DNA of 64,000 nucleotides. Origin: Octopus sinensis (lineage: Eukaryota). The stretch covers positions 57,474,001 to 57,538,000 of the forward strand of contig NC_043006.1 of NCBI RefSeq assembly GCF_006345805.1, in the 5' to 3' direction. Below, piece after piece: positions 5,785 to 58,874 of the stretch; position 1 is the stretch's first letter; the number at the start of each line of letters is the position of its first letter. Made by a program: the position numbers and the translations under genes. Under the pieces are notes generated by a model. The model was not told the DNA's origin and searched no databases. It was given only the letters and a program-made list of their open reading frames with translations.

Positions 5785-6808
5785 CGCACGCACACACAAT
5801 TAAATCAGATATGAAATCCTCTTAAAGAGTTGTTAGCATCCAAAGTTCGCCGGTTTTATCCAGCATCAGTGAAAAAACAAAGATGTTAGTTTCGCATTGA
5901 TTGATATGGATATAAATTATTTAAGAATAGAAAAAAAAGCCCCAGAGAATCTGTTGTATAGGCATCAATTTATTTGAATTTATTCAATTCTGTACAATAT
6001 CAAATTCTTTTGATATTGTACAGAATTGAATATGTTCAAATAAATTGAAATATATATATATATAGTCAATAATAATAAAGGGCAAAATTAATTAATTAAT
6101 TAGTAATTAATAATTTTACCAAGCAGTGTTCAGTATGTAAAAGGACCATTTATGGTAAATTTAAACATTACTTTATATAATTAGGGTTCAGCAAAAACAT
6201 TTGCTTTACCACATACCGAACTTTTAGAAATAGCAGCCCAAAAAATTAGCTATTTCTTCTACTGTGGTAAAGCAAATTTTTTTGCTGGACCCTAATTATA
6301 TAAAGTAATGTTTATATATATATATATGGCAATCTTACGGTTCTAAATATGAATTAGAGATAAAAACAACACTATTATGCAACTCAAACAGTGATAGACA
6401 TAAACCAATACATAAATAACAAATATATATATATATAATATATATATATATATTTATATAAAGGCAATAAACAAGAGAAATGTGTAAGAAAAGAAAATGA
6501 GAGGAAACGGTATTTATTAGAAGTTTATTACTACAAACGAAAGATCGCCTATATAATTTTTAAGACAAGTCTTTCAATATATAAATACAATGTTGCGAAG
6601 TGTTTATCAAATTTCAAATGAAGCGGTTTTGCTACTGCTTCGACAATAACCTGTTGTCATGAACAATGCGATACTACGCAGTTCAGCAATCACTGAACTC
6701 ATCTTACACCGCTTTACAAAATCATCATCGTTCTACCCTAACATTGAAACATTCACTAGCAACGATCAATCGTACTTTTTACAACCACGATTACCGAGTT
6801 CAGTTACT

Positions 6809-7470
6809 ATGGACTTGGCGAAATGTCTGAAGGCGAACGGGAATATACAACGGAAAAAATTCGAGTCGATATTCAGTCGATTTGACCGTACATTCAGTGA
6901 TTGTGAAGTTGTCGATTTAAATGAGTTGTTTACAGAGAGCGATCGAACAAATATTCCATCACAACGGAAAGCTACACATAAACCCTTGTCTCGCACAACG
7001 AAAAACAAGAGAAATCGCCGCAAACCTAGCAAGTTAGTGGTAGTCTCTAACAAAAAATTCCCGAAATATCAAACAAGGAGTGTAACCAAGAGAAAATGTT
7101 CAAAGTCTACAAAAGGCACCTCTACCCGCCTTGCGAGAAAATCAAAAACAGCGCGAAAATCGAATGGACGTGTAAAAGATATTTTCCCGAGTCCTTTACC
7201 TAATGGCAATATGGTGGGATCGGTCGTGTCGCGTAACAAAAGTATGTTCTGTGAACCACCAACCGTTATGGATCTAGATGTTTCGGATTCAGATGGCAGC
7301 GATAATATTTCTGATGTTGATACAAACGATGAAGGTTCTGACAAGAGTCAGTTCTGTACTCCCCCAACTATCATTGAAGTAAACCCTTCCATTAGCAGAA
7401 GTGGTTTCTGTACTCCACCGACGGTGATTAACGAAAAGCTGGACGGAAACTTTGACCTGAACAAGGAAAA
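6809..7470 (+). CDS. First coding exon of a Scm3/HJURP-like (candidate CENP-A chaperone) gene; alternative upstream in-frame ATG at 6659
   Basis: Only long non-repetitive ORF in the region (6659-7474). ATG 6809 has a good Kozak context (ACTATGG). MDLAKCLKANGNIQRKKFESIFSRFDRTFSDCEVVDLNEL matches the Scm3/HJURP N-terminal motif, followed by a basic tract and an acidic, TP-containing tract. Phase-2 donor AA|GTAAAG at 7470/7471 just before the in-frame stop. Confidence 0.7.
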
Positions 7471-8278
7471 GTAAAGTATTTCATTTTATTTTATTTTCAT
7501 TTTAAAATCCAAGTGTTAACATCAAGACACCGGCATGAGAATTATGATGTGCCGAAGCTTTTCGTTGAATAGTGGCACTTACACAGCCAAAACATTTTAA
7601 ATATTTTTTGTTGGAGGTATCGAAATCCCCCACCACCACTACCTCTTTTTATTTTTTTTATTTTTCCGGGTTCATGTTTTTAACAACGGGTATTACGATT
7701 TGTAAATTTCTGTATAGAAATTTTCAAAAATATCGGATTTGCTGTGTCTAACCGAAATGATCCATACTGAGATTACAGTTCTTGAATCTTTTTTTTTTCT
7801 TCAGAAATTTCAACTTTCAAAGCTTTTTACTACTTTACTGTACCCTGAAAAACAAGTATATATTTTCATTCATAAAATTTTTCTTCCGAAAACTTTAACA
7901 TAGAAAAATAGTAGTGTTGTCTACTGAGGCCTCATGGTCTAGGGGACCATTTGTGATCAATATTGTTGTGGTTTGCTCTCAATATATAAATACAGTGGGG
8001 CCCAGTGCATTGATTTGTTCAGGAGCCTATGCTGTTGAGACGGCCCTGTCAATTATTTTAATTCAATAATATAACGATGGTGTCTAAAAAGGAAAACAAT
8101 AATTGGCTATCTTTCATTTTGACTCGAATTTTGTCAACAAATTACTGGGTAATTTCTGTGAGCACGTGTTGTCTTGTTAAATATTTACCTATTCGTTTCG
8201 GTCATTCAGTTACTATTACCTTCACCCACCCGGGAACAAAAAGTAAAATAATAAACCAGTCTGTGGGGTACAAGCAAG

Positions 8279-9156
8279 TGTGTGGAAAACGAATATTTAA
8301 AAAAATGCGCGCTGATGATCCTGGGGGGTAGAAACGGGACTTTCGGAAAATTCACAAGATCCGATTTTTCCGTCATAAATTCGGGTAAAATGGATATATA
8401 GTGATTTATTTTTTTACAGAATCCCTCGTTTTTGGTTATGGAAGATCCGATTCTGAAAAAAAATTTTCAAAAATCGCATTTTCAAAATTTTATTATGTTA
8501 TCGCAGTTTTGTGAGATTTGGCTGTTATTTCTAGCATGTGCATAACCTGCTTGAAGGCCTGAGGGTATACTTTATCTTTTTCCTTGTTGAAAAATTGGAA
8601 TTTTACAAACAATTTTTTTTCAGAATCGTATCTTCGTATTTTGCTACATATTTCGGGGAAAAAAAAAGTTTAAAAAGGAAAGCTTAAAAAAAAAAAAAAA
8701 CTTTAATTTCACATGAATTACTTTGTCGTATTACTGCAGGGAGGGTTATATATATATATATATATATATAACCAAATAATATATAAACATATGCATATAT
8801 GGGTACAGGACACAATGAGAACGGAAAACATAAAAACAAAAACATGGAAACGGACTTTTTTTCAAACAACAAAAAACCAGAGTACAAGACATACAACACA
8901 AGGAATATTCCCCTTCTTCAGTTGTCCCTGTTTTGGCTACTCTGCATTTCGCAGGTAAGGACAAGACACGAAAAAATTTTTTCAGTAATGGATCCTCCAT
9001 AACCAAAAACATGGGATTCCGTAAAAATAAATCAATATATATTCATTTTACCGGAAGTTATGACGGAAAAATTGGATCTTGTGAATTTTCCGAAAGTCCC
9101 CTCCCCACCCCCAGGGTCGTCAGCGTACATTTTTTTTCATATTCGTTTTCCACACA
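8279..9156. mobile_element. Foldback/MITE-like element with ~190-bp terminal inverted repeats and an internal insertion
   Basis: 8279-8470 is the approximate reverse complement of 8970-9156. The internal 8760-8965 segment resembles the repeat at 51870-52100. Confidence 0.6.
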
Positions 9157-9309
9157 TTTTTTTACACCCATTGCACTATATTTTTTACATTAACCATTGT
9201 TATTTCTGATAGATGAATTGACTGCGTGGAGGATTTCTCGGTTAGAAAAAAGTTCTTCAAGTTCTGATCCAGCAGACCTATGTACTCCACTTTAGGTGGC
9301 ACCGGCACA

Positions 9310-9660
9310 GGACTCTTGCTGGCTCTTCACCAGGGGCAGCAGCCTTAACACTTCTGCTGTGGAGGGATGGGTCTTCTTGAGTACAGCAAGATGTCAAGCA
9401 TCTCGGTCCTAAGTCATCTTGTCTGAAATTTTTAGCATCCTGATGTTGTCTTTCAATACTTTGTCCCATGTTTTCCTGGGTCTGCCTCTTCCACGGGTTC
9501 CATCCACATTGAGTCATCTGCACTTCTTTATGGAGCTGTCAGCATCCATTTGCATCATAATACCAAGCCAGCATAATCACCACTCTTGCACACTGCATTT
9601 AATACCTCTTATGCCTAACTTCTTTCTCAATACACTTGCACTCTGTTGCACATGTACGCT
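9310..9660 (-). mobile_element. Degenerate RTE LINE 3' fragment
   Basis: Minus-strand DNA encodes GRGRPRKTW-like and downstream RTE C-terminal residues across frameshifts. Confidence 0.55.
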
Positions 9661-12600
9661 TACATTACACATTCCAGAGGAGCTGTGAGTTTTAATAAAA
9701 TTCATGTATTCACAAGAAATACAGATGCTATTTCTAGCATGTGTAGTGATTATATATAGTCAGTACCAGGTGTTGATGTGGCTGCGTGTATATTATTACA
9801 AGAGTTCATATAGAGATGAAGAATACATTCAAGACATATATATTTACTACATAAGAATATATTTTATTTACTGGTCGATGATGATGCATAGAATCAATAT
9901 GTAGAATCTAATTTAATGAAATAATCTATGCAAGAAAGTTCAGAGATAGAAAATGTAGAAATAACAACTAAATGAAAGTTTTCAATCGTGTGGTGTAGAG
10001 AAATAGATGGACACAGAAATGACGTGAATGGCTCTAAGTCTAATTGACTAAGAAGCAAAGAGCAGGCTTAGCAAGCTGTTTTTATTAATGGAACACTAGA
10101 CATTGTAGAAACTTCCAAGGGAAATGCTAAGCTTCTTGAATAATTAAGAATCATGTCTCGTGACACAGATGCTTCGAGAAATTTAGTAAAGGAAGGTTAC
10201 TCTATAATCCTTCTTGTAAGGGAGATCATTCAAATACTTAGCTACCAATACACATGTTTGCTACTAGCAGTATGGGATCTTTTCTGTTTGGCTGCCATTT
10301 CTTCAATTTTTGTTCTAATCGATTTTAGATTTGGCCTATTGATGTAGTTTTCTAGAGTAATCATTGATATAAAATTCATTTTGACCATAAATCAATAGAG
10401 AAAGAGTTAATAGCTTTTAAAGTTTGCAAATTTTGGGTAATTTTAGCCAATCGAAAGCCATAGTCATATAGGTGCCTGTTCCTTAGTAACAAGCCAAACT
10501 GTTCACCACATGTTCTTTTTGTTGCTTATTAAATGCTTGAAACATGTGGTATAAGATGTGCTAAAAATAACAGCTAAATAGGCCTTAAATCACGCACAAA
10601 TTTTTTTTGCATAATCGCATGAATTCCCATGTGTAGAATACTAATTCACAAAAATTTTTTTTTTAATTCCAAAAAATAAAAAAAGTTATGAGGGGTTATA
10701 TGGCATGTGTAAAGTAGAATTCCTCCAATATTTCATTTGTTTACTGTTGACAACATGTGCTGTCAACATACAAAATAACAGCTTCCAATCCCATTTTCTG
10801 ACTGAACTTTTTTAAAAAAATTTTCTGGGGAAAAAATGAGCCATCTCCTGATATTCAGTGTGGAAAATTAAATCAATACACCAAATTTTTTAAATTTCCA
10901 CTAAACTTTATAATTTCCACAGGTGCACCCAAACAGAAAATATCCACATTATGTATACACATACACAGAAATCGTTAGTTTAGCCCCAGACCTATTACTA
11001 AGGGTATTCTACATATTAATCACAGTGTGACAGGATTAGATGATTTGGAAGGTTGTGTCTTGTTCTAATGTCTATATTCACATGGTTTCAATGGCTTCAT
11101 ACTCTTCCTAACTCCAATCATTTTACAGAATGTATTGTGTGTGTGTTTTGTAATTCCATGACTCCTTTCAAGAGTAAAGGATCTAAAGAGGCTTCTTAAC
11201 TGTGGAAGAATTGGAGAGTTTGATGAGTTTATGTAAAGTGATGAGAGATGGTGGAGTATGATAAGAACGAATTACACACACACACATATGTACACTTATG
11301 TTAGCAATGCAGATTTATGAATGATTTCTAAAAGTTCAACAAGTCTTTTCAAAATAACACTGGATGAATACAATTTGAGGGTATGTGTGTTTATTTCAGC
11401 TTGGATTTCTACTCCTCACCCTTTTTTAAAATGTCTCTCTCTCTGTCTCTGTCTGTCTGTCTCTCCTCTCTCTCTCTCTCTAGATATATATATATATATC
11501 ATCATTATCATCATCGTTTAACGTCTGCTTTCCATGCTAGCATGGGTTGGATGATTTTGACTGAAGTCTGGCGAACCAGATGGCTGCACCAGAATCTGAT
11601 CTGGCAGAGTTTCTACAGCTGGATGCCCTTCCTAACGCCAACCACCCCGAGAGTGTAGTGGGTGCTTTTATGTGCCACCAGCACGAGGGCCAGTCGGCGG
11701 TACTGGCAACGGCCATGCTCAAATGGTGCTTTTTATGTGCCACCTGCACAGGAGCCAGTCCAGCAGCACTGGCAACGACCTCATTCATACTTGTTTCTGT
11801 CATTTGACTGCAGCTATACAAGAGTGCTGCCTCGAAGAGTTTTCGTAGAACAAATCGCCCCCAGGACTTATGTTTTTTTAAATCCTAGTACTTGCTGAAT
11901 TGCTAGATCACAGGAATTTAAACATCAATACCAGTTGTCAAGTGGTGATGGGTGGGGGTGGGCACCTTCAGATTTGCCCTGTACTCCCCAGTAGTAGTAT
12001 TATATGTACTTCCAGGTTTGCGTTTGGGCATATGCCATGTGTGAATAGATAATATATGTGGCCGTCCGCCAGCCTCGTCTGGCAATTGTGTCGGTGACAC
12101 ATAAGAAAACACCATCCGAGCGTGGCTGTCAGCCAGCCTCGTCTGGCACCTGTGTCGGTGGCACATAAAATCACCCACTACACTCTCGGAGTGGTTGGCG
12201 TTAGGAAGGGCATCCAGCTGTAGAAACACTGCCAGATCTGACTGGCCTGGTGCAGCCTTCGGGCTTGCCAGACCCCAGTTGAACCGTCCAACCCATGCTA
12301 GCATGGAAAGCGGACGTTAAATGATGATGATGATGATATATATATATTATAGAAGAATATTGTTGACAAGGTGTGGCTATGTGGTAAGTAGCTTGCTTAT
12401 GGACCACATGGTTCTGTGTTCAGTCCCACTGTGTGGCACCTTGGGCAAGTGTCTTCTGCTATAGCCTCGGGCTGACCAAAGCCTTGTGAGTGGATTTGGT
12501 AGATGGAAACTGAAAGAAGCCCATCATATATATGTATGTGTATATGTTTGTGTCTCTGTGTTTGTTCCCCCAGCATCTCTTGACAACCAATGCTGGTTTG

Positions 12601-13778
12601 TTTGCGTCCCCATAACTTAGCGGTTCGGCAAGAGAGACCGATAGAATAAGTACTAGGCTTACAAATAATAAGTCCTGGGGTTGATTTGCTCGACTAAAGG
12701 TGGTGCTACAGCATGGCCACAGTCAAATGACTGAAACAAGTAAAAGAGTAGAGTGGCTTTGAAATTTTGGCTGAAACTTCAAATCTCTGTCAACAACATT
12801 CTTGTGTAAGAATAATAAGTTTGAACTCTTCAAAAGTATAAAGCAACTCATCAGATTAATGTAAAATTGTTTATTATTATAACTGAACATAAAAACAAGC
12901 ATTAATATATATATATTGAGGCAGAAAAGAGAAGCAAACAGTTAGGTAAGACTTGACAAAGACGTTTAATTTAGCTATATAATAAAAGGTTTAGATAGTC
13001 TCTGACAGCTGTTCTCTAGAATATATCCCGGCTACTGGAACATAGTGTCGAGTGAGAATTCCATAGGCTGAGTATTTGGTCATTGGAGAGAGATTGGTTA
13101 AACATATGTAAGAGTGGATGAAAAGGTCTTCATAAGTGATAGTTATTGTCGTTTGTTATGTCTAGAAAGGGAGGAGAAATAAAATGAAAATAGGTATTCA
13201 CTATGTAAATCCATGAACAGAGAGAATTTTTCTCTTAGGTTTACAATCCGCCCAACGCTGTATTAGGTTTACAGTTCACCCAGCTTTGTTTGTTGGGTTT
13301 ATAGTATACCCAGCTCTGTTGTCAGCGTTATTTACAGTCCACTCACTTATACTGAGAATTTTATTCTGAGTAGGTTACAGTGAGTACAGAATCAACAGAA
13401 GGCTACATCCCTTGGCAAAGAAGATTGGCCTGCAAGAGTCCAGTGCCAGTTCCATTGAAATAAAGCTCTTGTGCTAGTGGCACATTAAAAGCACCTAACA
13501 CACAGTGTAAAGTGGTTGGCGTTAGGAAGGGCATCCAGTCATAGAAACCAAGCCAAATCAGACTGGAACCTGGTGCAGCTCTCTGGCTTGCCAACTCTGG
13601 TCAAACTGTCCGACTTATGCCAGCATGGAAGACGTTAAAAGATGAGGATGGTTTATTTTTACACATACAGGAAACAACATATTTCTTTTAAGACCTTAGT
13701 GATGCTTGTAATAATTAAGCTAAACCTTTTTTTTTTTTAATCATGTGAATTCTATTCTTTTTTTCTTTCTATTTGTAG

Positions 13779-13829
13779 ACAATCAGATATATGGCATGAA
13801 TGCTTCAGCAGATATTATGTTCCTACTAA
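13779..13829 (+). CDS. Probable internal exon of the Scm3/HJURP-like gene (K-QSDIWHECFSRYYVPT)
   Basis: Polypyrimidine tract plus TTTGTAG acceptor and AA|GTAAGT donor. 51 nt, phase 2 in and out, open frame continuing exon 1. Confidence 0.55.
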
Positions 13830-14921
13830 GTAAGTTTTTAACCCTTAAATTTATTGGTTTGAAATTTTGGCACTGCCAGCAGTTTTAGGGGAGGGGTAAG
13901 TTGGTTACATCAACTCTAATATTCAACTGTTACTTACTGAAGAGATGAAAGGCTAAGTTGACCTTGGCAGAATTTGAACGTGAAGATGGATGAAATGACA
14001 CTAAGTATTTTGTCTGGCATGCTAACGATTCTTATTTCTTTATTGCCCACAAGGGGCTAAACATAGAGGGGACAAACAAGGACAGACAAAGGGATTAAGT
14101 CGATTACATCAACCCCAGTGCGTAACTGGTACTTAATTTATCGACCCTGAAAGGATGAAAGGCAAAGTCGACCTCGGCGGAATTTGAGCTCAAATGTAGT
14201 GGCAGACGAAATACCTATTTCTTTAGTACCCACAAGGGGCTAAACACAGAGAGGACAAACAAGGACAGACAAACGGATTAAGTCGATTATATCGACACCA
14301 GTGCGTAACTGGAGGATGAAAGGCAAAGTCAACTTTGGTGGAGTTTGAACTCAGAATGTAACGGCAGACAAAATACCTCTTAGCATTTCGCCCAGCGTGC
14401 TAACGATTCTGCCTGCTCGCTGCCCCATATATATATATATATATGATGCCTATGGATAAAATGTCACTAAGCATTTTGTCTGGTGTGCTAACGATTCTGC
14501 CAGTTCATCACCTTACAAAAATATTTATTTATTTTCAAGAAATGCTATAATTCTAAAATTGTTAGCAAAATTAGTTTAAACATTTGTAATTGAATATTAT
14601 CTTCATCGTTTTAACATCCACTCTTCTTTGTTTGCATGGGTCAGATGGAGTTTACTGAGGCAGATTTTCTACACCCAGATCCCTTTCTTGTTGCCAATCC
14701 TTACCCATTCCTCAACAAGGTAGTATTTCTTTATGAAATAACTAAGGAGATAGTAAGAAATTCACATTGAAATTACAGTTGATTTATGGTGGAAAAAAAC
14801 TCTCATGTAACAAAAACAAAATGATAAAACTGTAAGATATCAATATTTAGGACATTGAGAAATATTAATATAATTAAAGTTTTATAATTGTTTGCTTTAA
14901 TTTCCTATATTTTACCCATAG

Positions 14922-14999
14922 GTCTATGCTAAATATAAATCAAAGAACCACAAAAGCTCTTTTAAAATGGCAGAAGCATTTTGCTCACATGTTTCCAAG
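14922..14999 (+). CDS. Probable internal exon of the Scm3/HJURP-like gene (K-SMLNINQRTTKALLKWQKHFAHMFP)
   Basis: TTTTACCCATAG acceptor and AG|GTAAGG donor. 78 nt, phase 2 in and out, open frame. Confidence 0.55.
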
Positions 15000-15461
15000 G
15001 TAAGGTTTTTAATTTTGTTTCAATCTAAGTTACATTAATTATACACACACATGCTCCCCACACACATACATACACACACACACACACATATATATATATA
15101 TGAAGGTGCATGGCTCAGAACTTATGATTGTGAGGTTGTGAGATTGAATCCCGGACCGGGTTGCTTGTTGTGTTCTTGAGCAAGACACTTTATTTCACGT
15201 TGCTTCAGTTCACTCAGCTGCAGAAATGAGTTGCGACATCATAGGTGCCAAGCTGTATCGGCCGTTGCCTTTCCCTTGGATAACATCGGTGGCATGGAGT
15301 ATGCATGGGTGACTGCTGGTCTTCCATAAACAACCTTGCCCGGACTTGTACCTGGGAGGGTAACTTTCTAGGTGCAATCCCATGGTCAGTCATGAATGAA
15401 GGGGGTCTCAGCAGCTCAGCAGCATATATATATATATATAGATATATATATACTCATATAC

Positions 15462-17060: not shown

Positions 17061-17084
17061 TAGTGGCTTGTATATATATATATA

Positions 17085-17360
17085 TATACATACATAAGAC
17101 AGTAAGGTGTGATTTGAGGGAGATTTGGCTGCTATTTCTACCATGTCTAGCTGCCATGTAGGGGTCTCCCTCATAGGCTCATACATACATATATACATAG
17201 ATAAGACAGTAAGGTGTGATTTGGGGGAAATTTGGCTGCTATTTCTACCAGGTCTAGCTACCATGTAGAGGTCCCCCTCATTGGCTCATATATATATACA
17301 TACATAAGACAGTAAGGTGTGATTTGAGGGAGATTTGGCTGCTGTTTCTACCAGGTCTGT
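17085..17360. repeat. ~110-bp tandem repeat, about 2.6 copies
   Basis: ATAAGACAGTAAGGTGTGATTTG...GGCTGCTATTTCTACC recurs three times. Confidence 0.8.
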
Positions 17361-18553: not shown

Positions 18554-18554
18554 T

Positions 18555-18807
18555 ATATATATATATGTATACATACATATATATAATATATAATATATAT
18601 ATATATATTATATATATATATATATTATATATATATATATGTATACATACATATATATATATATATATTATATATGTATACATACATATATATAATATAT
18701 ATATAATGTATACATACATATATATTATATATATATGTATACATACATATATATATATATATATATATGTATACATACATATATATATATATATATGTTA
18801 TATATGT

Positions 18808-18839
<32 letters not shown>

Positions 18840-18869
18840 GTATACATACATATATATATATATATATGT

Positions 18870-18958
<89 letters not shown>
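18555..18958. repeat. Compound (AT)n / GTATACATAC minisatellite
   Basis: Directly visible. Confidence 0.9.
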
Positions 18959-38572: not shown

Positions 38573-38671
<99 letters not shown>

Positions 38672-38678
38672 TATATAT

Positions 38679-38807
<129 letters not shown>

Positions 38808-42105: not shown

Positions 42106-42106
<1 letters not shown>

Positions 42107-42173
<67 letters not shown>

Positions 42174-42218
42174 GTCTATCTGTCTATCTATCTGTCTATC
42201 TGTCTATCTATCTATCTG

Positions 42219-42285
<67 letters not shown>

Positions 42286-42306
42286 GTCTGTCTGTCTGTC
42301 TAGCTA

Positions 42307-42393
<87 letters not shown>

Positions 42394-42430
42394 CCTCTCT
42401 CTCTCTCTCTCTCTCTCAATCTATCTATCT
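42107..42430. repeat. (ATCT)n/(GTCT)n tetranucleotide microsatellite; a similar tract follows exon 2 at 50986-51230
   Basis: Directly visible. Confidence 0.9.
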
Positions 42431-42783
42431 AACTAGCTATAGTGTTCTTTCGCTCCATACCTTCTCCTTAATCCGTGTGTGTGTGTGTGTGTGCGTTCAT
42501 GTATGTGTGTGTGTAAAAGAAGGAAATAGTTTTTCTTTCTTGCGAATTATGTTAAAAACACGACTTTTACAGTTTTAATTATTTTATTCAAGACTAATAA
42601 GGAAGTCCCAGGAGTGACTGTGTGGCAAGTAGCTTGCTTACCAGCCACATGGTTCCGGGTTCAGTCCGACTGTGTGGCACCTTGGGTAAGTATCTTCTAT
42701 TATAGCCTCGGGCCGACCAAAGCCTTGTGAGTGGATTTGGTAGACAGAAACTGAAAGAAGCCTGTCGTATATATGTATATATA

Positions 42784-47715: not shown

Positions 47716-50307
47716 TATTGGCCACAAGGGCCGACACACATGATTAATAAACATAAAGGGATAAAACAGGACGAAAAGGTTACAAATGGTTTTGTCCGTT
47801 TTTGAAAAAATCCGAGTAAAAACTGTTTAACAACGAAAGATTATAACAATGAAAAACTCCCAATAGGGGGAGGCGCTTCGAAAGGTTCCTGGTGGAAAAA
47901 CCCCCATAAAAGCCAACGGGAGCCTGGTCAAAAGGGGGGTAGAGAGCCCCTTTCTCCTTTTATAAAACCTTTTTCAATCACAGGCGAAACCTGAGCATTG
48001 GTCCATTTATACTGGCCATTCTCGCACAATTCACCCACCTTTCAGAAAACTTGCTATCGGACAGCACTCTCCTCTCTAACCTCATCTTCCTTTTCAAGTG
48101 AAACTTGAAAAAGTTGATGAGGCCTTGACCAAAGAGGAAAGTGTCTGACTTTAGCCCTTTCAAACGGGTCCACCATACAATCTCTTTCGCCACAGCCACT
48201 AGGCACAGAAAAACGGCTTCGCCCTCCTTGTTAAAGGAGGTCGGCGGGGAAATCTTCATTATGGATTCGGCTGATAGCCGGATCCGTCCTATACGCGACA
48301 GTAGCTGTTCGACATAAACCCATAGTTCAGCAATACTCGGGCACTGGACGAGTGCGGGCAGAACGGTTTCGTCGTCCTGGCAACACCTCGGGCAGGCCCG
48401 GCTGACGGCACTTCCGTGCCGGTAGAGTTTATCCCGAACAGACAGAGCCCCTCGGTAGCACTGCCAGGCGAGCGACCTCTGGAAATTATCCATTGGCCCC
48501 GGCCCGAAAGTCCTTCCGAACAGACCGCTCAGTTCGTTATCATCAACGCCTAGAGTTTCCCCGAGAACGTCGTCGCATTTTTCCTCCACTAACCCTCTAT
48601 AGAACGCTAGAATGGAACTAAAACCGATCGCATTGCCCGCCTGGCGGAGGGCGGAGGGCGGAGAGAGTTTGACGGCACTCGAGGTGCCAAGCGCCCTTTC
48701 TCGGTCTACGTTTGATCTAGGTCTGCAGCTCTGTCAAAGAGACGAGCTGCGGAAAGTCGCGTCTGACAAAAGACGACCACACCTGATCACCGTCTAGGAA
48801 ACGCTTGAGATGTCGCAGCCTGAGCGCATGTCTGCGCATCAGTAACCACGGCATGCCAAGGCCTCCGTTCAGCGGTCGTTGACAGCAGATGGATCGCCTG
48901 ACCAGTGGCACCTGACCCTTCCACAAAAAGTCGAAGAGCAGGCGTACCAGCTTGGCCAACCAGCGGTTGGGACAAGGGACGACGGTCAAGCGGTAATAGA
49001 TGACGGATGCGATGTATGCATTCGCCACCTCCGCTCGACTTTTTAGGGACAGCTTCCTCTCGGCCCATTTCTGGGTGAGATGTGCCACCCTTCTCGTCAC
49101 TTCTTCCCAGTTTTTATCCATCTGGAGGTCCGGACCGAACCAGACCCCGAGCAGTTTAACGGGTCCGTCTGTCCAGCGCCCTACGACGCTGTTGGACGGC
49201 ATGGGCTTGCCTCTCCAGGTGCCCAGTTGCAAGCCCACAGACTTTTCCGCGTTAATCTTTGCCCCTGTCACTGCTTCGTACTCGTTTAGTGTCTCGCCAA
49301 TCAGGCCAATGTGCCTGTAGCTTGACACCATCACGGTGACGTCGTCGGCATAGGCAGACACGTTGTTTCCGCCTCCTAGATCGCGCGGGATACCCTTCAA
49401 AGCCTCCAACTTGCGCAGTAATGGCTTGAGAGTCAATATGTACAAGAGGGAGGAGAGAGGGCATCCTTGGCGGACCGAACGCGAGATGTCGAACGGTTCC
49501 GAAAGGTGACCGTTCACCCGTATCACCGAGAAGATGTTGCTGTATAAAGCAGCGATCCACCCGCGGAAGACTGGACCGAAGCCGGCTGCCTTGAGAACAG
49601 CTGCCAGGTACCGATGGTCTACCCTATCGAAGGCTTTACTCTGATCTAAATTTATCAAAGCCCCACCCACACCAGCGTCGTTACCCACCCTCTATGATGT
49701 AGCGCATGAGATGGAGGTTGTCGTGTATCGACCTGGTCGGCACGGCGCATGTCTGCGTCTTGCCAACCAGCTTGTCCACGACAAGCGCCAATCTCTTGGC
49801 TAGCACTTTGGCCAAAATCTTCAACTCTGCATTGAGCAGAGTGATGGGCCGAAAATTCCCTATAACGTCCCCCTTGTTTGGGTCCTTTTTTAGCAAAGCC
49901 ACCACCCCCCCGACAGACAAAAGCAGGAATTCTCCCCGTTTTGCTGCCAGTTGCAGTAGACGTTTGCCAACAGGCCCGCAACAAGTCTGGCATTGAAGTG
50001 TAAAGCTCGTAGGGCAGACATCCAAACCCGGCGATCTACCTCTCGTGCAACTTTTCATCGCTTCCTCCACTTCCCAGGCAGATATCGGTCCTTCGTAGAA
50101 CTCTGCCTCGCTGTTCGAGAGCCGCGGTAGGCCGTCCAGGTACACACTGAAGTCTTTACCGTTGGTGTCCGTTCCACCGCTCGTCCCAAACAGTTGAGCA
50201 AAGTGCCGCTGAAATACCGTACACATCTGCTTCGGCTCGGTAACTTCGCGCCCGTTCTGGTCCACCAAAGACCGAATGCTGGCTTTGTTGGTCGCTTTTG
50301 ACAGCAT
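47716..50307 (-). mobile_element. 5'-truncated Tx1-clade (L1 group) LINE with frameshifted ORF2 (RT plus C-terminal zinc finger)
   Basis: FRPITLLNAELKILAK, LDQSKAFDRVDH, VRQGCPLS, AYADDV and CPRC..DETVLPALVQC. GC-rich body; AATAAA followed by (ATT)n at the 3' end. Confidence 0.88.
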
Positions 50308-51485: not shown

Positions 51486-51489
<4 letters not shown>

Positions 51490-51560
<71 letters not shown>

Positions 51561-51571
51561 ATATATATACA

Positions 51572-51607
<36 letters not shown>

Positions 51608-51613
51608 ATATAT

Positions 51614-51653
<40 letters not shown>

Positions 51654-51697
51654 CATATATAATATATATATATAACATATATATATATAATATATAC

Positions 51698-51761
<64 letters not shown>

Positions 51762-51816
51762 TATATATTATACATATATATATAATATATATACATATAT
51801 ATATGCATATATATGC

Positions 51817-51875
<59 letters not shown>
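51490..51875. repeat. Long (AT)n/(AC)n microsatellite block; other large (AT)n blocks at 1355-1415, 38585-38795, 53000-53120
   Basis: Directly visible. Confidence 0.9.
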
Positions 51876-54228: not shown

Positions 54229-57200
54229 TCAAGTTTTGTTTATGCTCCATTCAAGTAGTGAGATTTTGTTGGGTGAGTTGTATCCAATTATGGGTGGCTT
54301 ATCTGGTATTCTTTGAAGGAATCTATCCAGACTCCGTTTAAAGTTGACGGGATCCTTTTCCTCTTTGATCTCTTTCGGGACAATGTTAAATAGGGCAGGG
54401 CCTGTTGAGGAAAAGAAATTATGTTGCAGTGTACATGTATGCTGTGATCTTGAATTGGACAGGGGACGTATGGCCCGTGGTCCCAGTCTTGGATGAACCT
54501 TGAAGCTAATGTTCAAGTCGTTTGGGCAAAGTTGGCGGTATATTCTCCACATCGTACAAATGATGTTCCGCTCACGGCGACGCTGGAGAGAGTAGACTTT
54601 CAAGGCTTTAAGGCGATCCCAATAATCGAGAGCAGCCATGCCTTCAATTCGTTTAGTGAGTGCCCTCTGGGTTGCCTCAATTCTGGAGATGTTTTGTCTT
54701 GTGTGAGGAGACCACAGTGGGCAGCAGTATTCGAGGTGTGGCCGTACAAAGGAGGAGAAAAGTGGTATGATGACACCTTGTTCTCTGACCGGAAAGTTCT
54801 TAAGATCCAGGAACTCATCCTACGAGCTATATCGACCTTCTTGTTGATGTGTGCACTCCAACTGAGATCGTCATCAACAATTACACCCAGGTCTCTGATA
54901 TTGTTAGAGGCTGTGAGCGGTTCCCCTGAAGGAAGAGAGTATGGCTGTTTTAGTGAGGAATTTCTTCCAAAATGCATAAGCTCAAATTTTCCCTCGTTCA
55001 GTTGCATTTTGTTTCTGTCTGACCATTGACTCACAGCATATAGATCAGACTGGAGTTGAGTTCGGTCTGCTTCTTCATTGACGATTTGCTGGAGTTTAGT
55101 GTCATCAGCAAATATTTTCACTTTGCAATAATGTACGTCACTGGAAAGGTCGTTTATGTAAATTATGAAGAGTAGCGGACCCAAGACAGTCCCCTGGGGA
55201 CACCGCTGGTGACTTTTGATGGGCTTGAGTGGACTCCATCAACTACAACATGTGTTCTATTCGCCAGGAAATACTTAATCCAGTGTAGAACTTTTCCACG
55301 GATTCCAACATTTGCCAATTTTGAGAGTAGGATATTATGGTCTACCCTGTCGAACGCTTTACTGAAGTCAAGATATATGACGTCAGAGTTCGAACCTGTT
55401 CCCAATGCTTTGAGTACATCTTCAATGTGGTGTAAGAGCTGTGTTAGACAGTCCCTGCCACAGCGAAAGCCATGCTGATTTGCATTTAGGAGTTTGTGGG
55501 TCTCCAGTAAGTCAGCTATCCTTGATCTTAACACTCTTTCAAACACTTTAATGATGTGGGAGGTGAGTGAGATTGGGCGATAGTTGAGTGCGAGGGATCT
55601 GTTTCCCTGTTTGAAAACCGGGATGACTGACTGGGATAGAAACTGTTTCGGTATATAACCTGCGTCTAACGAATTTCTCCAGAGGTTGGTCAGAGGGACT
55701 GCAAGTTGGCGTCTACATTCCTTCAGGAGACTAGCGGGGAATCTATCAGGGCCTACAGCAGAGTAGTATTTGACCTCATTTATTGCTGCTACGATGTCAG
55801 TGGCAGTGAAGGTTATGTCTGAGATTTTATGTTGGGAGTCAACTTCGTTCGCTTCTTTTACGTCAATATCAGTGGGAACACTAAAGACAGAGCAGTATTG
55901 TTTCTGCAGTATTTCTGCCATTTCTTTAGCATCGTGTTGGGGAATGCCGTTATTATCAATCAATGGCCCAATGGGTGAGACAGTGGTTCTATGCTTATTT
56001 GCATAAGAATAGAACACTTTTGGGTTCTGTTTGATGTTTTTGATTACCCACTGTTCCTCCACAGCTCTTTGATTTTCAATGGAGGTTTTCATGTCGGTCT
56101 GCAGATGAAGTTTTTCCAGCTCTAGATTTTCATTGTTGTTGAATGTGGATGTTGTGTGTGGGAATATTTTAATTGGTTGATTTTTTTGTTGAGTCTTTTG
56201 ATGCGCTGATGAGTGTTTTTTTTCTTTTTAAGGAGCCGGTTTCTGTTTGTGATAGTAGATTTCGTGGGAGCGTGTTTAGAGCATGTATAGGTGACAATGT
56301 TTTCAAAGTGCTGCCATGCGGTCTCAATATGGGTGGAATTGAGAGTAAAAGACCAGTCGATGAAAGACAGATCCTTTCTGATTGCTCCCCAGTCCGCTTT
56401 GTGGAAGTTTATGTTGTCAAATGGGTGCCATGGAGTGGGATTGGCTGGTTTGGTTTTTATATGTCGGGAATTAAAATTGCGGAGTACCATGTCGTGGTCT
56501 GAGAAGAGAGTTTTTTCAACTGAAATACTGTGAACGAAGCTAGAGTGATTGGTCAATACCAGATCCAAGATAGTTTTATTCTGTCTCGTTGGTTCGAGCA
56601 CTAGCTGAGTCAGGAAGTATTCATCCATTAGATTAAAGAGCAGTTCTGCTGCTTCTCTATCTGATGTAGAGCATTTGCCTAACTTTAGAGTATTTGTGGG
56701 CCAGTTCACATGAGGGAGGTTAAAATCACCCATCACTAGTATGTTTCCGGAGTGGTACTTCCGAAGGAAGGGCTTGACTTTGCTAAGGCACTCTTCAAAG
56801 CACTTTAGAGGTGCTTGGGGAGGCCTGTAAAGACCAACAATGATTATGCCCTTGGCCTTGCTGAATAGTGATACCGATTCACAGTAGCCATTGGAAAATA
56901 TGTCCTTGGCATCAAGTGAAAAGGAGTCATGGATAAAGATGGCTGTCTCTCCCTTATTTCGGTCTGCGCGATCCGCACGAACAATGGTGAAATCTTTTAT
57001 TTTCACCTCGGCGTCCATATGGGTGTTGTTCAGGTGAGTCTCGGTAAGGATAAAGAAAGGGAAGCAATGTGCCGTTTCGGCAAGCCAACTCTCTATATAT
57101 GGGATCTTCCATTTTTGGGCAATAATTGATGGGTTGATGTCACGTACATTTAACAGGAATGTCGAGGTAAGGGAAGTTTGATGTTTGCATTGTTCTAAGT

Positions 57201-57306
57201 TATGTTTTATGTTGTTCAGTGGTAACAATGTGGGTAGTTCTTGTATGGAGCTGTGTGTGTATGATTTTCTTGTTGGTAGTGGGTGTGTGGTCCTTGTGAT
57301 TTGCAT
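54229..57306 (-). pseudogene. LINE ORF2 (apurinic endonuclease plus reverse transcriptase), split over four ORF-track pieces
   Basis: APE motifs LTETHL, YRPP, MGDFNLP, LDLVLTN, SDH. RT motifs YRPISLTS, YLDFSKAFD, SGVP..GPLLF, FADDTKL. Pieces 56122-57306, 55163-56092, 54600-55184, 54229-54639. Confidence 0.88.
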
Positions 57307-57445
57307 AGGTGGTTGCTGATAGCTCGTTGGATCTCCTGGCTTAGGTCGGCCTTCATATTTTCTAGGTAAGTCAGTAAAAAAGATTTACCTCTTTGGTTTG
57401 CCACTTGGTCAGAGGATACATATTTCATGTTGGTGTTATTTGGTG

Positions 57446-58402
57446 TTATGGTTTTTTCATGGTTCTGTCTACGTTGTTTGATTGTAGGAGGGGAAAGGTG
57501 GTTGTATTTTGTTCTTGTTGTTGTCGTAGATTTCCTCTGTTGCTGTTTATTTTATTTTGTGATCGTTTTGTGCCCTTCAGATGGTGGTGGTTGCATTCTG
57601 GGTTCAGGCACATCCTTTGTGACACAGAAGTTTGGCACAGTTTAGGATGGAAGAAGGTGCATCCATTGCCTTTTGTGCATCCATATTTGGGATCAGGACC
57701 ATGGACTCTGTATTTAGGACAGTATTTGGGGTGGAGGTGAGGGCAGTTTTTTCCCGTTATACCATATGGACAGGTGCCCTTAACAAGTCTACGACATAAT
57801 GTAGGATGGGAAAAAGCACAGCGTCCATTGTTGTTGGTGCCGCTGGGGCCAAATCTACAGCTGCCTTGAGAATAGTAACGGCAGGATGTTTTATGTGGGT
57901 GTAGTAGTGGTTTTTCTATTCTGGTTGTAGTAGCAGTAGCAGAGTGTTGTTGTTGTTGTTGTTGCTGTAGCAGTAGTGAAACTTGACTTGGAATCGGGTC
58001 ATCAGGTATTGGTTCCAATGTAGTGGCAGAAGCAGGCTGTTGTTTTTGTGATAGTGGGTTCTGGCTTGCCAGAATGGGCGGAATTAGGTCAGATGTTTGT
58101 TGCTGGCTATCGGGTCGTTGAAGTGACCCCTGACCTGTTGGAGTTGGGTCATTTGGTGCACTGCATTCATTGGCAAGAATGGCTTCTAGTGTTGTCATGT
58201 GCGTGTGGAAAATAGACAATATTCTTTTAATATCTTTTATTTTATTTTCGATCTGTTTTACAGATCTGTGAAAGGATTGTTTCGCTAAGTTTTCAGCTAT
58301 TTTACTGTAAACTTTAGCTTCGTTGTGGTGAATGAACCAAGCGTTTATCATTGCAGTAATTTCATTTTCAACCCAGTGGCGTTTTTGAATATTATTGGCC
58401 AT
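57446..58402 (-). CDS. LINE ORF1: Myb/SANT-like trihelix domain, poly-Q linker, tandem CCCH-type zinc fingers; probably continues by frameshift to ~57216
   Basis: ATG at 58402 (MANNIQKRHWVENEITAMINAW...VYSKIAENL...FHRSVKQIENKIKDIK). CRYYSQGSCRFG...CAFSHP and three further C-C-C-H units. Confidence 0.7.
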   Translation of the reverse strand: MANNIQKRHWVENEITAMINAWFIHHNEAKVYSKIAENLAKQSFHRSVKQIENKIKDIKRILSIFHTHMTTLEAILANECSAPNDPTPTGQGSLQRPDSQQQTSDLIPPILASQNPLSQKQQPASATTLEPIPDDPIPSQVSLLLQQQQQQQHSATATTTRIEKPLLHPHKTSCRYYSQGSCRFGPSGTNNNGRCAFSHPTLCRRLVKGTCPYGITGKNCPHLHPKYCPKYRVHGPDPKYGCTKGNGCTFFHPKLCQTSVSQRMCLNPECNHHHLKGTKRSQNKINSNRGNLRQQQEQNTTTFPLLQSNNVDRTMKKP

Positions 58403-58874
58403 ATTCAGTGGGACAGTATTATACACTGTACGCCAGTTATTGATGGCTTGATGTAAAATAGTGAATACACCGTTGAAAAGTTTGTATCGAAATATTCGGA
58501 AATGCGTGGCTTGTGTGCGGGAGAGTTCAGTGTATTTAGTACAATCAGGATGAGCGGTGTGTTTAATACAGATCAAGAAAAAAGAATTGTTCTCACGGGA
58601 CTAGTTTTAGAACTAGTCTTCGGTTTAGTTTTGGTTTATATTTCTTTCTCCAGGTTGTGTATAGATTTGTATAAATTTATCCTCCGATGGTAGTATAAGA
58701 GTAGAATAGTAGAATTGTAGAATTCAAAAGTTCTGGGACTAAAAACAAGGAGAGTTTCTGCTGGCTTGAGTTGGAATATGCTTCTTTGGCTACTGACCGG
58801 AGCTATGAAAAGTACGTCTTGTCACGACGAATGCCTGCGCTATAAACACATATACATAACTACATACACTCGCA

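What the first reader, a model, noticed from the sequence alone, without database searches (positions are those of the whole stretch)
6809..6931. Candidate mollusc Scm3/HJURP-family CENP-A chaperone
Seen: the protein from ATG 6809 begins LAKCLKANGNIQRKKFESIFSRFDRTFSDCEVVDLNEL. It aligns without gaps to the human HJURP N-terminal Scm3 domain as I recall it (LLQKLRASRRRFQRRMQRLIEKYNQPFEDTPVVQMATL). The hydrophobic spacing is kept (F..IF.RF...F.D..VV.L..L vs M..LI.KY...F.D..VV.M..L), and it also resembles the fungal Scm3 pattern FE.IF.KY...F....D.IDL. The motif sits at the extreme N-terminus followed by disordered basic and acidic tracts, as in HJURP. Established: Scm3/HJURP deposit CENP-A, were classically known from fungi and tetrapods, and Drosophila uses CAL1. 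Orthologues in other animals are hard to detect, so this gene would likely be annotated as uncharacterised. Inference: this is the cephalopod CENP-A loading factor. I cannot tell whether remote-homology surveys already include it.
Basis: partly seen in the sequence, partly recalled or inferred. Interest (0 to 1): 0.85.

Follow-up and report, generated by a model that had tools for sequence, protein, structure and literature searches.

The report
Octopus Scm3/HJURP-like CENP-A chaperone gene
This octopus gene, annotated as uncharacterised, starts with a short domain that most likely matches the one yeast Scm3 and human HJURP use to load the centromere histone CENP-A, but a 2026 survey already found such genes across animals, including a snail.

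Summary
ATG 6809 opens a 221-codon exon that begins MDLAKCLKANGNIQRKKFESIFSRFDRTFSDCEVVDLNELF. It aligns without gaps to human HJURP residues 17-55, checked against PDB 3R45 chain C.

- **Homology evidence.** Each hit is weak alone, but all agree.
  - Pfam Scm3 (PF10384) is the top hit for the window protein and two octopod orthologues (E 0.036, 8e-4, 0.014). All fall below the 24.3-bit cut-off.
  - HJURP is the best PDB hit for the octopod profile (E 0.12).
  - hhalign against mammalian HJURP gives P 2.2e-5, with 0 of 300 shuffles reaching the score. That beats the yeast Scm3 versus HJURP yardstick.
  - All registers put octopus R24-F25 (Argonauta R-Y) on the KY motif.
- **Gene model.** It has three coding exons and encodes 264 aa. 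The same layout is kept in Argonauta hians: N-terminal helix, basic tract, three FCxPPT motifs and a conserved C-terminal tail. dN/dS is 0.59 overall and lowest (0.30) in the N-terminal domain.
- **Verdict.** This is a probable octopod Scm3/HJURP orthologue (about 0.75). CENP-A binding was not tested.
- **Novelty.** Low. Hollis et al. 2026 report Scm3/HJURP orthologues in most metazoan lineages, including the mollusc Biomphalaria.

The parts
6809..7470 (+). Coding exon 1 (aa 1-221, phase-2 end; donor GTAAAG at 7471)
   Evidence: ORF and sequence. It is 99% identical to O. vulgaris 'Hypothetical predicted protein' and 73% to a Logan octopod contig. Upstream of 6809 the reading frame is not conserved between species, so ATG 6809 is the start rather than the annotated ATG 6659. 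The Argonauta protein also starts only a few residues before the motif.
6815..6928 (+). Scm3-like domain (aa 3-40). An amphipathic helix (about aa 3-23 in AF2) is followed by R24-F25 at the KY position and the acidic/short-hydrophobic stretch SDCEVVDLNEL.
   Evidence: Pfam PF10384 is the top hit over aa 15-43. Ungapped HMMER alignment to 3r45_C HJURP. hhalign P 2.2e-5 with 0 of 300 shuffles. Same register against yeast Scm3. Lowest dN/dS in the exon, 0.30.
6962..7174 (+). Basic, serine/threonine-rich disordered tract (about aa 52-122; aa 46-143 hold 30 K+R and 1 D+E). Probably a nuclear localisation and/or DNA-contacting region (inferred).
   Evidence: Composition. AF2 pLDDT below 50. Partly conserved in Argonauta.
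7247..7267 (+). FCxPPT motif 1 (FCEPPTV, aa 147-153)
   Evidence: Read from the sequence. Aligned with FCDPPTL in Argonauta.
7271..7342 (+). Acidic/serine tract (about aa 155-178)
   Evidence: Composition. An acidic tract follows each motif in Argonauta as well.
7352..7372 (+). FCxPPT motif 2 (FCTPPTI, aa 182-188)
7406..7426 (+). FCxPPT motif 3 (FCTPPTV, aa 200-206)
13779..13829 (+). Coding exon 2 (completes K221, then QSDIWHECFSRYYVPT and the first two bases of the next K). Acceptor tttgtAG, donor GTAAGT.
   Evidence: Conserved with Argonauta exon 2 (IWNEHFKNFFVST).
14922..15003 (+). Coding exon 3 (SMLNINQRTTKALLKWQKHFAHMFPR plus TAA). The stop lies in the 'donor' used by the O. vulgaris annotation. 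It sits at the same position as the Argonauta stop (FAHLFPK-TAG).
   Evidence: The annotated fourth exon (about 17271 onward) falls in a 107-bp tandem repeat.
6580..6587 (+). TATAAATA, a possible TATA box just before the block conserved with the other octopod (starts at 6594). Weak evidence.

Best explanation
Window 6809-15003 (+) holds a three-exon gene for a 264-aa, basic (pI 9.9), mostly disordered nuclear protein. It is the octopod orthologue of the Scm3/HJURP family of CENP-A chaperones.

**Proposed mechanism (inferred from the family).**
- The N-terminal amphipathic helix (about aa 3-27) packs antiparallel to helix alpha-2 of the CENP-A histone fold in a pre-nucleosomal CENP-A:H4 dimer.
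- R24-F25 takes the place of the KY dipeptide.
- The acidic/short-hydrophobic stretch D31-L40 (DCEVVDLNEL) forms the strand that pairs with the CENP-A targeting domain.
- The chaperone thereby holds the dimer off bulk chromatin and delivers it to centromeres.
- The octopod-conserved parts outside the domain are the three FCxPPT motifs and the C-terminal IW.E.F...W...FAH.FP[RK] tail. They are the likeliest centromere-targeting or cell-cycle-control modules. They would be analogous to the Mis18-binding repeats of HJURP or the CENP-C-binding C-terminus of CAL1.

**Shown here:** the sequence, the gene model, conservation across octopods and statistical similarity to scm3 domains.

**Inferred:** CENP-A binding, centromere targeting and the roles of the motifs.
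For: - **Pfam.** Scm3 is the top hit of 24,736 families in three diverged orthologues, at the same register: E 0.036, 8.2e-4 and 0.014.
- **PDB.** The octopod profile's best hit is HJURP 3r45_C, ungapped over 39 residues, E 0.12. Argonauta alone gives the same top hit.
- **Profile-profile.** hhalign against mammalian HJURP gives P 2.2e-5 and probability 76%, with 0 of 300 shuffles reaching the score. This is stronger than the yardstick between accepted homologues, yeast Scm3 versus HJURP, at P 0.005.
- **Consistent register.** The octopus-human, octopus-yeast and yeast-human alignments all place R24-F25 (R-Y in Argonauta) on KY.
- **Matched hydrophobic positions.** L3, L7, F18, I21, F22, F25, F29, V34, V35, L37 and L40 match HJURP L18, L22, M33, L36, I37, Y40, F44, V49, V50, M52 and L55.
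- **Architecture.** It fits the family as described in PMC13322267: an N-terminal scm3 domain, a polar unstructured remainder, fast evolution and a short conserved C-terminal motif.
- **Selection.** dN/dS is 0.59 overall but 0.30 in aa 1-45.
- **Real coding gene.** Indels in exon 1 are in multiples of three, and the exon structure and stop position are conserved with Argonauta.
- **Circumstantial.** In Argonauta the gene sits head-to-head, 2.1 kb away, with the kinetochore kinase gene BUB1.
Against: - No hit reaches Pfam's gathering score (14.2-19.5 bits against 24.3).
- Database-wide E-values are only 0.1-0.4 for the PDB.
- A shuffled control produced an unrelated hit at E 0.032.
- The three orthologues are not independent tests.
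- The tyrosine of KY is F in Octopus.
- The fungal DxGxL motif and the TLTY box are absent.
- There are no HJURP mid or C-terminal domains.
- No orthologue was found outside octopods in 1.8 and 5.8 billion-protein searches, so no bridge to the reported gastropod candidate could be made.
- The AF2 monomer models are low confidence (pLDDT 40-43) and show only the helix.
- No test of CENP-A:H4 binding was possible.
- I could not check whether the octopus proteome holds a better Scm3 candidate.
Confidence: 0.75

Rival explanations
1. Chance resemblance. The gene encodes an octopod-restricted disordered nuclear protein of another function. Its N-terminal amphipathic helix only mimics the scm3 pattern.
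For: All Scm3 hits are below Pfam's cut-off. PDB E-values are 0.12-0.43. Chance hits at E of about 0.03 do occur. The three orthologues share ancestry, so repeated hits are correlated. No intermediate sequences link it to accepted members.
Against: The same family comes out on top in Pfam, in the PDB and in profile-profile comparison. hhalign gives P 2.2e-5 with 0 of 300 shuffles. The register is consistent across human, yeast and octopod, including KY and the acidic/hydrophobic strand. The N-terminal position and overall architecture fit the family.
Confidence: 0.15
2. A true scm3-domain protein that is a paralogue or derived relative and not the main CENP-A loader. For example, it could be germline-restricted, or it could chaperone another H3 variant.
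For: The octopus proteome was not searched for other candidates. dN/dS is high at 0.59. CAL1 and Cid paralogues exist in mosquitoes (reference list of PMC13322267).
Against: Only one cluster of relatives was found in database-wide searches. Hollis et al. report a single strong hit in most deuterostome genomes. The gene is retained with the same architecture from Octopus to Argonauta.
Confidence: 0.07
3. Not a functional gene: a decaying pseudogene or an annotation artefact.
For: The O. vulgaris model has a doubtful N-terminal extension and a doubtful fourth exon in a tandem repeat. No transcript evidence was available. The Logan contigs are genomic.
Against: The frame stays open, with indels only in multiples of three, at dS 0.22. 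The N-terminal domain is constrained (dN/dS 0.30). Three exons, their splice sites and the stop position are conserved with Argonauta at 29-41% protein identity.
Confidence: 0.03

Closest known systems
Human HJURP scm3 domain (PDB 3R45 chain C; Pfam PF10384)
   Same: The domain is N-terminal. Aa 2-40 align without gaps to HJURP 17-55, and 11 hydrophobic positions match. K39-Y40 corresponds to R24-F25, F44-E45-D46 to F29-S30-D31, and V49-V50-x-M52 to V34-V35-x-L37. The remainder is disordered and polar.
   Different: Identity is only about 21%. There is no TLTY box or beta-domain after the strand, and no HMD or HCTD repeats (no Pfam hits). The protein is 264 aa; from memory, HJURP is 748 aa.
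Budding-yeast Scm3 (S. cerevisiae 2L5A, K. lactis 2YFV)
   Same: RKKFESIFSRFDRTFSDCEVVDL aligns with RKVWSNIISKYESIEEQGDLVDL at 30% identity, in the same KY register and with the same VDL strand.
   Different: Support is weak (P 0.02). The DxGxL/TGEI continuation is missing. In Scm3 the domain is central (S. cerevisiae numbering from memory), whereas here it is N-terminal.
Metazoan Scm3/HJURP candidates of Hollis et al. 2026 (for example Biomphalaria glabrata KAI8798300.1, Capitella ELT94853.1, C. elegans NEFR-1, Drosophila CAL1)
   Same: The type of evidence and the architecture are the same. There is a short scm3 helix-strand with KY or a conservative variant, an unstructured fast-evolving remainder, and a lineage-specific conserved C-terminal motif.
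   Different: No cephalopod is named in the text I could read, and table S1 was unreadable. The Biomphalaria hit was far stronger (HMMer E 3.9e-15) than anything obtained for the octopods. I could not compare the sequences directly.

Membership tests
Scm3/HJURP (scm3 domain, Pfam PF10384) | Sequence-profile match to the Scm3 model at Pfam's curated cut-off (24.3 bits) | tested here: inconclusive
   Scm3 is the top-ranked family in all three orthologues, but every score is below the cut-off. The scores are 14.2 bits (E 0.036), 19.5 bits (E 8.2e-4) and 15.6 bits (E 0.014). Shuffled controls gave no Scm3 hit.
Scm3/HJURP (scm3 domain, Pfam PF10384) | Profile-profile (HHpred-type) match to a solved scm3 domain. 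Hollis et al. accepted E values 'generally below 1'. | tested here: met
   hhalign of the octopod profile against mammalian HJURP gives P 2.2e-5, probability 76% and 38 ungapped columns. None of 300 shuffles reached the score. This was a pairwise run, not a database-wide HHpred.
Scm3/HJURP (scm3 domain, Pfam PF10384) | Reciprocal search returns a published Scm3/HJURP as best hit | tested here: met
   The best PDB hit of the octopod profile and of Argonauta alone is 3r45_C HJURP (E 0.12 and 0.43). The hit is weak. The P0002 orthologue alone did not find it.
Scm3/HJURP (scm3 domain, Pfam PF10384) | Amphipathic alpha-helix with hydrophobic residues spaced 2-4 apart, at or near the N-terminus in metazoans | tested here: met
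   AF2 models a helix at aa 3-23 (Octopus) and 6-31 (Argonauta), at low pLDDT of 50-59. Hydrophobic positions match HJURP. The domain starts at residue 3.
Scm3/HJURP (scm3 domain, Pfam PF10384) | KY dipeptide (contacts a glutamate on CENP-A alpha-2); conservative changes at K are tolerated | tested here: inconclusive
   The aligned residues are R-F in both Octopus-like sequences and R-Y in Argonauta. K to R is conservative. Y to F loses the hydroxyl.
Scm3/HJURP (scm3 domain, Pfam PF10384) | Alternating acidic and short hydrophobic residues after KY, forming the strand that pairs with the CENP-A CATD | tested here: met
   SDCEVVDLNEL in Octopus and SECDAVDINAI in Argonauta align to EDTPVVQMATL (HJURP) and QGDLVDLKTGE (Scm3). 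AF2 shows only an isolated strand/bridge at low confidence.
Scm3/HJURP (scm3 domain, Pfam PF10384) | Fungal DxGxL motif and TLTY box | tested here: not met
   Both are absent after L40. Hollis et al. state that both are poorly conserved in Metazoa, so they do not define the family for animals.
Scm3/HJURP (scm3 domain, Pfam PF10384) | Specific binding of a CENP-A:H4 dimer (predicted complex or pull-down) | not testable with these tools
   Only single-chain prediction of window or database proteins is offered. The monomer models are disordered.
Scm3/HJURP (scm3 domain, Pfam PF10384) | Centromere localisation and requirement for CENP-A deposition | not testable with these tools
   Experimental.
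Scm3/HJURP (scm3 domain, Pfam PF10384) | Sole or best scm3 candidate in the genome, co-occurring with CENP-A | not tested
   No octopus proteome could be searched. The database-wide searches found one orthologue cluster only.
Tetrapod-type HJURP architecture | HJURP mid domain and C-terminal (Mis18-binding) repeats | tested here: not met
   No Pfam hit to these domains in any of the octopod proteins at E up to 10. Per PMC13322267, deuterostome HJURPs as a whole share only the scm3 domain, and other metazoan orthologues show very little homology outside it. The gene is therefore filed as Scm3/HJURP family, not as tetrapod-type HJURP.

The most novel reading that the evidence does not exclude
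Octopods have replaced the known centromere-targeting parts of the chaperone with their own modules. The known parts are the Mis18-binding repeats of HJURP and the CENP-C-binding tail of CAL1. The octopod modules are three [KR]S.FC.PPT motifs, each followed by an acidic run, and a terminal IW.E.F...W...FAH.FP[RK] tail. Together these would define a new way of coupling CENP-A delivery to the centromere or the cell cycle in cephalopods. The gene may also share a bidirectional promoter with BUB1, as in Argonauta.
Probability: 0.25. Interest if true: 0.45.

Novelty: new member of a known kind. Interest (0 to 1): 0.3.

Why it matters
It puts a name and a testable function on an octopus gene annotated as 'hypothetical' or 'uncharacterized' (LOC115216700-type). 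It adds octopods to the picture of a near-universal Scm3/HJURP chaperone in animals. It also corrects the gene model: the start is at 6809, and the stop is at 15001-15003 rather than in a repeat-borne fourth exon. The octopod-specific FCxPPT motifs and C-terminal tail are handles for asking how the chaperone is targeted in a lineage where nothing is known about centromere assembly. It does not change the general view, because a 2026 study already showed the family to be widespread in Metazoa, including a mollusc.

Tried and rejected
- **Single-sequence PDB search.** phmmer of the exon-1 protein against the PDB found nothing. Only the profile, and Argonauta alone, found HJURP.
- **Searches for squid, gastropod or bivalve orthologues.** The word-indexed search (E up to 10) and the full HMMER scan of 1.84 billion representatives returned octopod proteins only. 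They also returned one unrelated-looking tandem-repeat ORF (P0004). No bridge to other molluscs could be built.
- **HJURP family search.** It returned only 17 short mammalian fragments. The family profile used for hhalign is therefore mammalian only.
- **AF2 monomer models.** pLDDT was 43 for Octopus and 40 for Argonauta. That is too low for a meaningful fold search, so none was run.
- **Logan contigs as transcript evidence.** Rejected. They start in a (GT)n microsatellite and follow the intron, so they are genomic.
- **BUB1 synteny in Octopus.** No BUB1 exon was found in the window or in the 10 kb upstream in O. vulgaris. The Argonauta adjacency stays an aside.
- **DUF4313 hit.** E 0.056, aa 144-206, seen only in the near-identical Octopus sequences and absent from P0002 and Argonauta. 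Treated as noise.
- **Supplementary table S1 of Hollis et al.** It is not held as text. I cannot say whether an octopus protein is listed there.

Full report
**What is in the sequence.** Window 6809-7471 (+) is an open frame of 221 codons.

- The frame stays open upstream to ATG 6659, and the O. vulgaris annotation starts there.
- That stretch is not coding. In a 73%-identical octopod contig, the conserved upstream DNA falls into a different reading frame.
- The Argonauta orthologue starts only a few residues before the motif.
- A TATAAATA sits at 6580-6587, just before the block conserved between the two species.

**Gene model.**

- Exon 1 ends at 7470 with donor GTAAAG.
- Exon 2 is 13779-13829, and exon 3 starts at 14922. 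All splice sites are canonical.
- Exons 2 and 3 encode QSDIWHECFSRYYVPTK and SMLNINQRTTKALLKWQKHFAHMFPR.
- This tail is 39% identical to the C-terminus of the Argonauta hians protein (pairwise E 4e-10).
- Argonauta has the same three-exon layout.
- Read through the donor used by the O. vulgaris annotation, exon 3 stops at once (FPR-TAA, 15001-15003). Argonauta stops at the same place (FPK-TAG).
- The annotated fourth exon lies in a 107-bp tandem repeat. I regard it as an artefact.
- The product is 264 aa with pI 9.9.

**Whose gene is it.**

- The exon-1 protein is 99% identical to 'Hypothetical predicted protein [Octopus vulgaris]'.
- The window DNA is 95-98% identical to the O. vulgaris assembly OX597822.1. 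The window therefore comes from a very close relative or a divergent haplotype.
- The Argonauta protein GAB1601124.1 is named 'uncharacterized protein LOC115216700'.
- Nothing beyond octopods was found in a word-indexed search of 5.8 billion proteins or in a full HMMER scan of 1.84 billion representatives.

**Is the N-terminus an scm3 domain.** Each test is weak alone. They converge.

1. **Pfam.**
   - Scm3 (PF10384) is the top hit for the window protein (E 0.036, 14.2 bits), for the second octopod (E 8.2e-4, 19.5 bits) and for Argonauta (E 0.014, 15.6 bits).
   - The hit is always over the same residues and profile positions, and always below the 24.3-bit cut-off.
   - Ten shuffled or reversed controls gave no Scm3 hit. 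One gave an unrelated hit at E 0.032, so a lone E of about 0.03 proves nothing.
2. **PDB.**
   - A three-sequence octopod profile searched against 177,635 PDB sequences ranks HJURP (3r45_C) first, at E 0.12.
   - Argonauta alone also ranks it first, at E 0.43.
3. **hhalign against HJURP.**
   - The octopod profile against an alignment of mammalian HJURP N-termini gives score 27.9, P 2.2e-5 and probability 76%.
   - Three hundred column shuffles gave mean 9.4 and maximum 18.8.
4. **Yeast Scm3.**
   - Against S. cerevisiae and K. lactis Scm3 (sequences verified), the score is 14.0, P 0.02.
   - As a yardstick, the accepted homologues yeast Scm3 and HJURP score 17.0, P 0.005, in the same test.
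5. **Register.** The three pairwise registers agree. Octopus R24-F25 (R-Y in Argonauta) falls on the KY dipeptide. SDCEVVDLNEL falls on the acidic/short-hydrophobic strand that follows it.

**Fit to the family description.** These are the features that Hollis et al. 2026 (PMC13322267) give as diagnostic.

- **Diagnostic features.** A helix with regularly spaced hydrophobic residues, KY with conservative changes at K, and alternating E/D and I/L/V residues downstream. These sit in an otherwise unstructured, polar, fast-evolving protein.
- **Structure.** AF2 monomer models are disordered (pLDDT 40-43). The exceptions are the N-terminal helix and, in Argonauta, short helices in the C-terminal tail.
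- **Selection.** dN/dS between the window and the second octopod is 0.59 overall. It is 0.30 for aa 1-45 and 0.70-0.83 for the rest. This fits a constrained scm3 domain in a rapidly evolving chaperone.

**What could not be shown.**

- Binding to CENP-A:H4 and centromere localisation are untested. The structure tool takes single chains only.
- I could not search an octopus proteome for a better candidate.
- I could not fetch the gastropod candidate for a direct comparison.
- The Y to F change at KY in Octopus, the absent DxGxL and TLTY motifs, and the sub-threshold Pfam scores all keep this at 'probable'.

**Other conserved parts.**

- Octopus and Argonauta share three copies of [KR]S.FC[DET]PPT[LIV], each followed by acidic residues. 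They also share the C-terminal tail.
- No known domain matches either.
- By analogy with the Mis18-binding repeats of HJURP and the CENP-C-binding C-terminus of CAL1, and with the conserved C-terminal motif reported for nematode NEFR-1, I infer that they serve targeting or regulation. This is inference only.

**Comparison with what is known, and novelty.**

- Hollis et al. (Sci Adv 2026) used PSI-BLAST and HMM searches, HHpred and AlphaFold-Multimer to find Scm3/HJURP orthologues in most metazoan lineages.
- Their set includes the mollusc Biomphalaria glabrata (KAI8798300.1) and the annelid Capitella. They also show that CAL1 is a diverged orthologue.
- No cephalopod is named in the readable text, and their table S1 is not available here.
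- No paper in the library links HJURP to octopus.
- The gene is therefore a new, or at least not visibly reported, member of a known kind.
- My estimate that it is a true Scm3/HJURP orthologue acting on CENP-A is about 0.75. Chance resemblance gets about 0.15.

**Verdict.** Interest 0.3.

Noticed in passing
L006 1-7902 (-) and 10001-13317 (+) (Argonauta hians BAAFZT010000018.1): The Argonauta orthologue lies head-to-head, 2.1 kb away, with a BUB1-type kinetochore checkpoint kinase gene (Mad3_BUB1_I + Pkinase; first exon MEWELSKENV...). This suggests a shared bidirectional promoter. No BUB1 exon was found in the window or within 10 kb upstream in O. vulgaris.
   Followed up: partly
window 8594-14849; L004/L005 (O. 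vulgaris OX597822.1): In the O. vulgaris assembly, the intron-1/exon-2 segment matching window 8594-14416 is present twice in tandem, about 12 kb apart. The same 318-aa protein is recorded at two overlapping gene positions. The window has one copy. This could be a real segmental duplication or an assembly artefact.
   Followed up: partly
window 17078-17358: A 107-bp unit is repeated about 2.7 times. The fourth coding exon of the O. vulgaris annotation (RSPSL) maps inside it. The conserved stop at 15001-15003 makes that exon doubtful.
   Followed up: yes
P0004 (ENA contig, 345-aa ORF): An ORF made of five tandem 69-aa units. Each unit contains FCTPPQVRVNESIRRSG, which resembles window aa 176-205 (SQFCTPPTIIEVNPSISRSGFCTPP) at E 1.3e-7. 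A piece of this gene family may have been amplified as a tandem repeat in some genome. The source organism is unknown.
   Followed up: no
window 47978-50307 (-) and 55163-58576 (-): Fragments of non-LTR retrotransposons. Pfam hits are reverse transcriptase (RVT_1), endonuclease (Exo_endo_phos_2), zf-RVT and a Myb/SANT-like domain. The ORFs are broken into pieces.
   Followed up: partly
window 18554-18957, 38587-38794, 51489-51835, 42106-42440: Long (TA)n/(AT)n and (ATCT)n microsatellites. The first accounts for part of the very low G+C (0.24-0.27) at 18-22 kb.
   Followed up: no
window 6610-6620; L006 about 9790-9800: A TTTGAAA/TTTCAAA element, resembling the CHR element of G2/M genes, lies about 190-200 bp upstream of the ATG in both Octopus and Argonauta. 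In Octopus it falls inside the block conserved with the other octopod. A six-base match is expected by chance, so this is only a hint.
   Followed up: no
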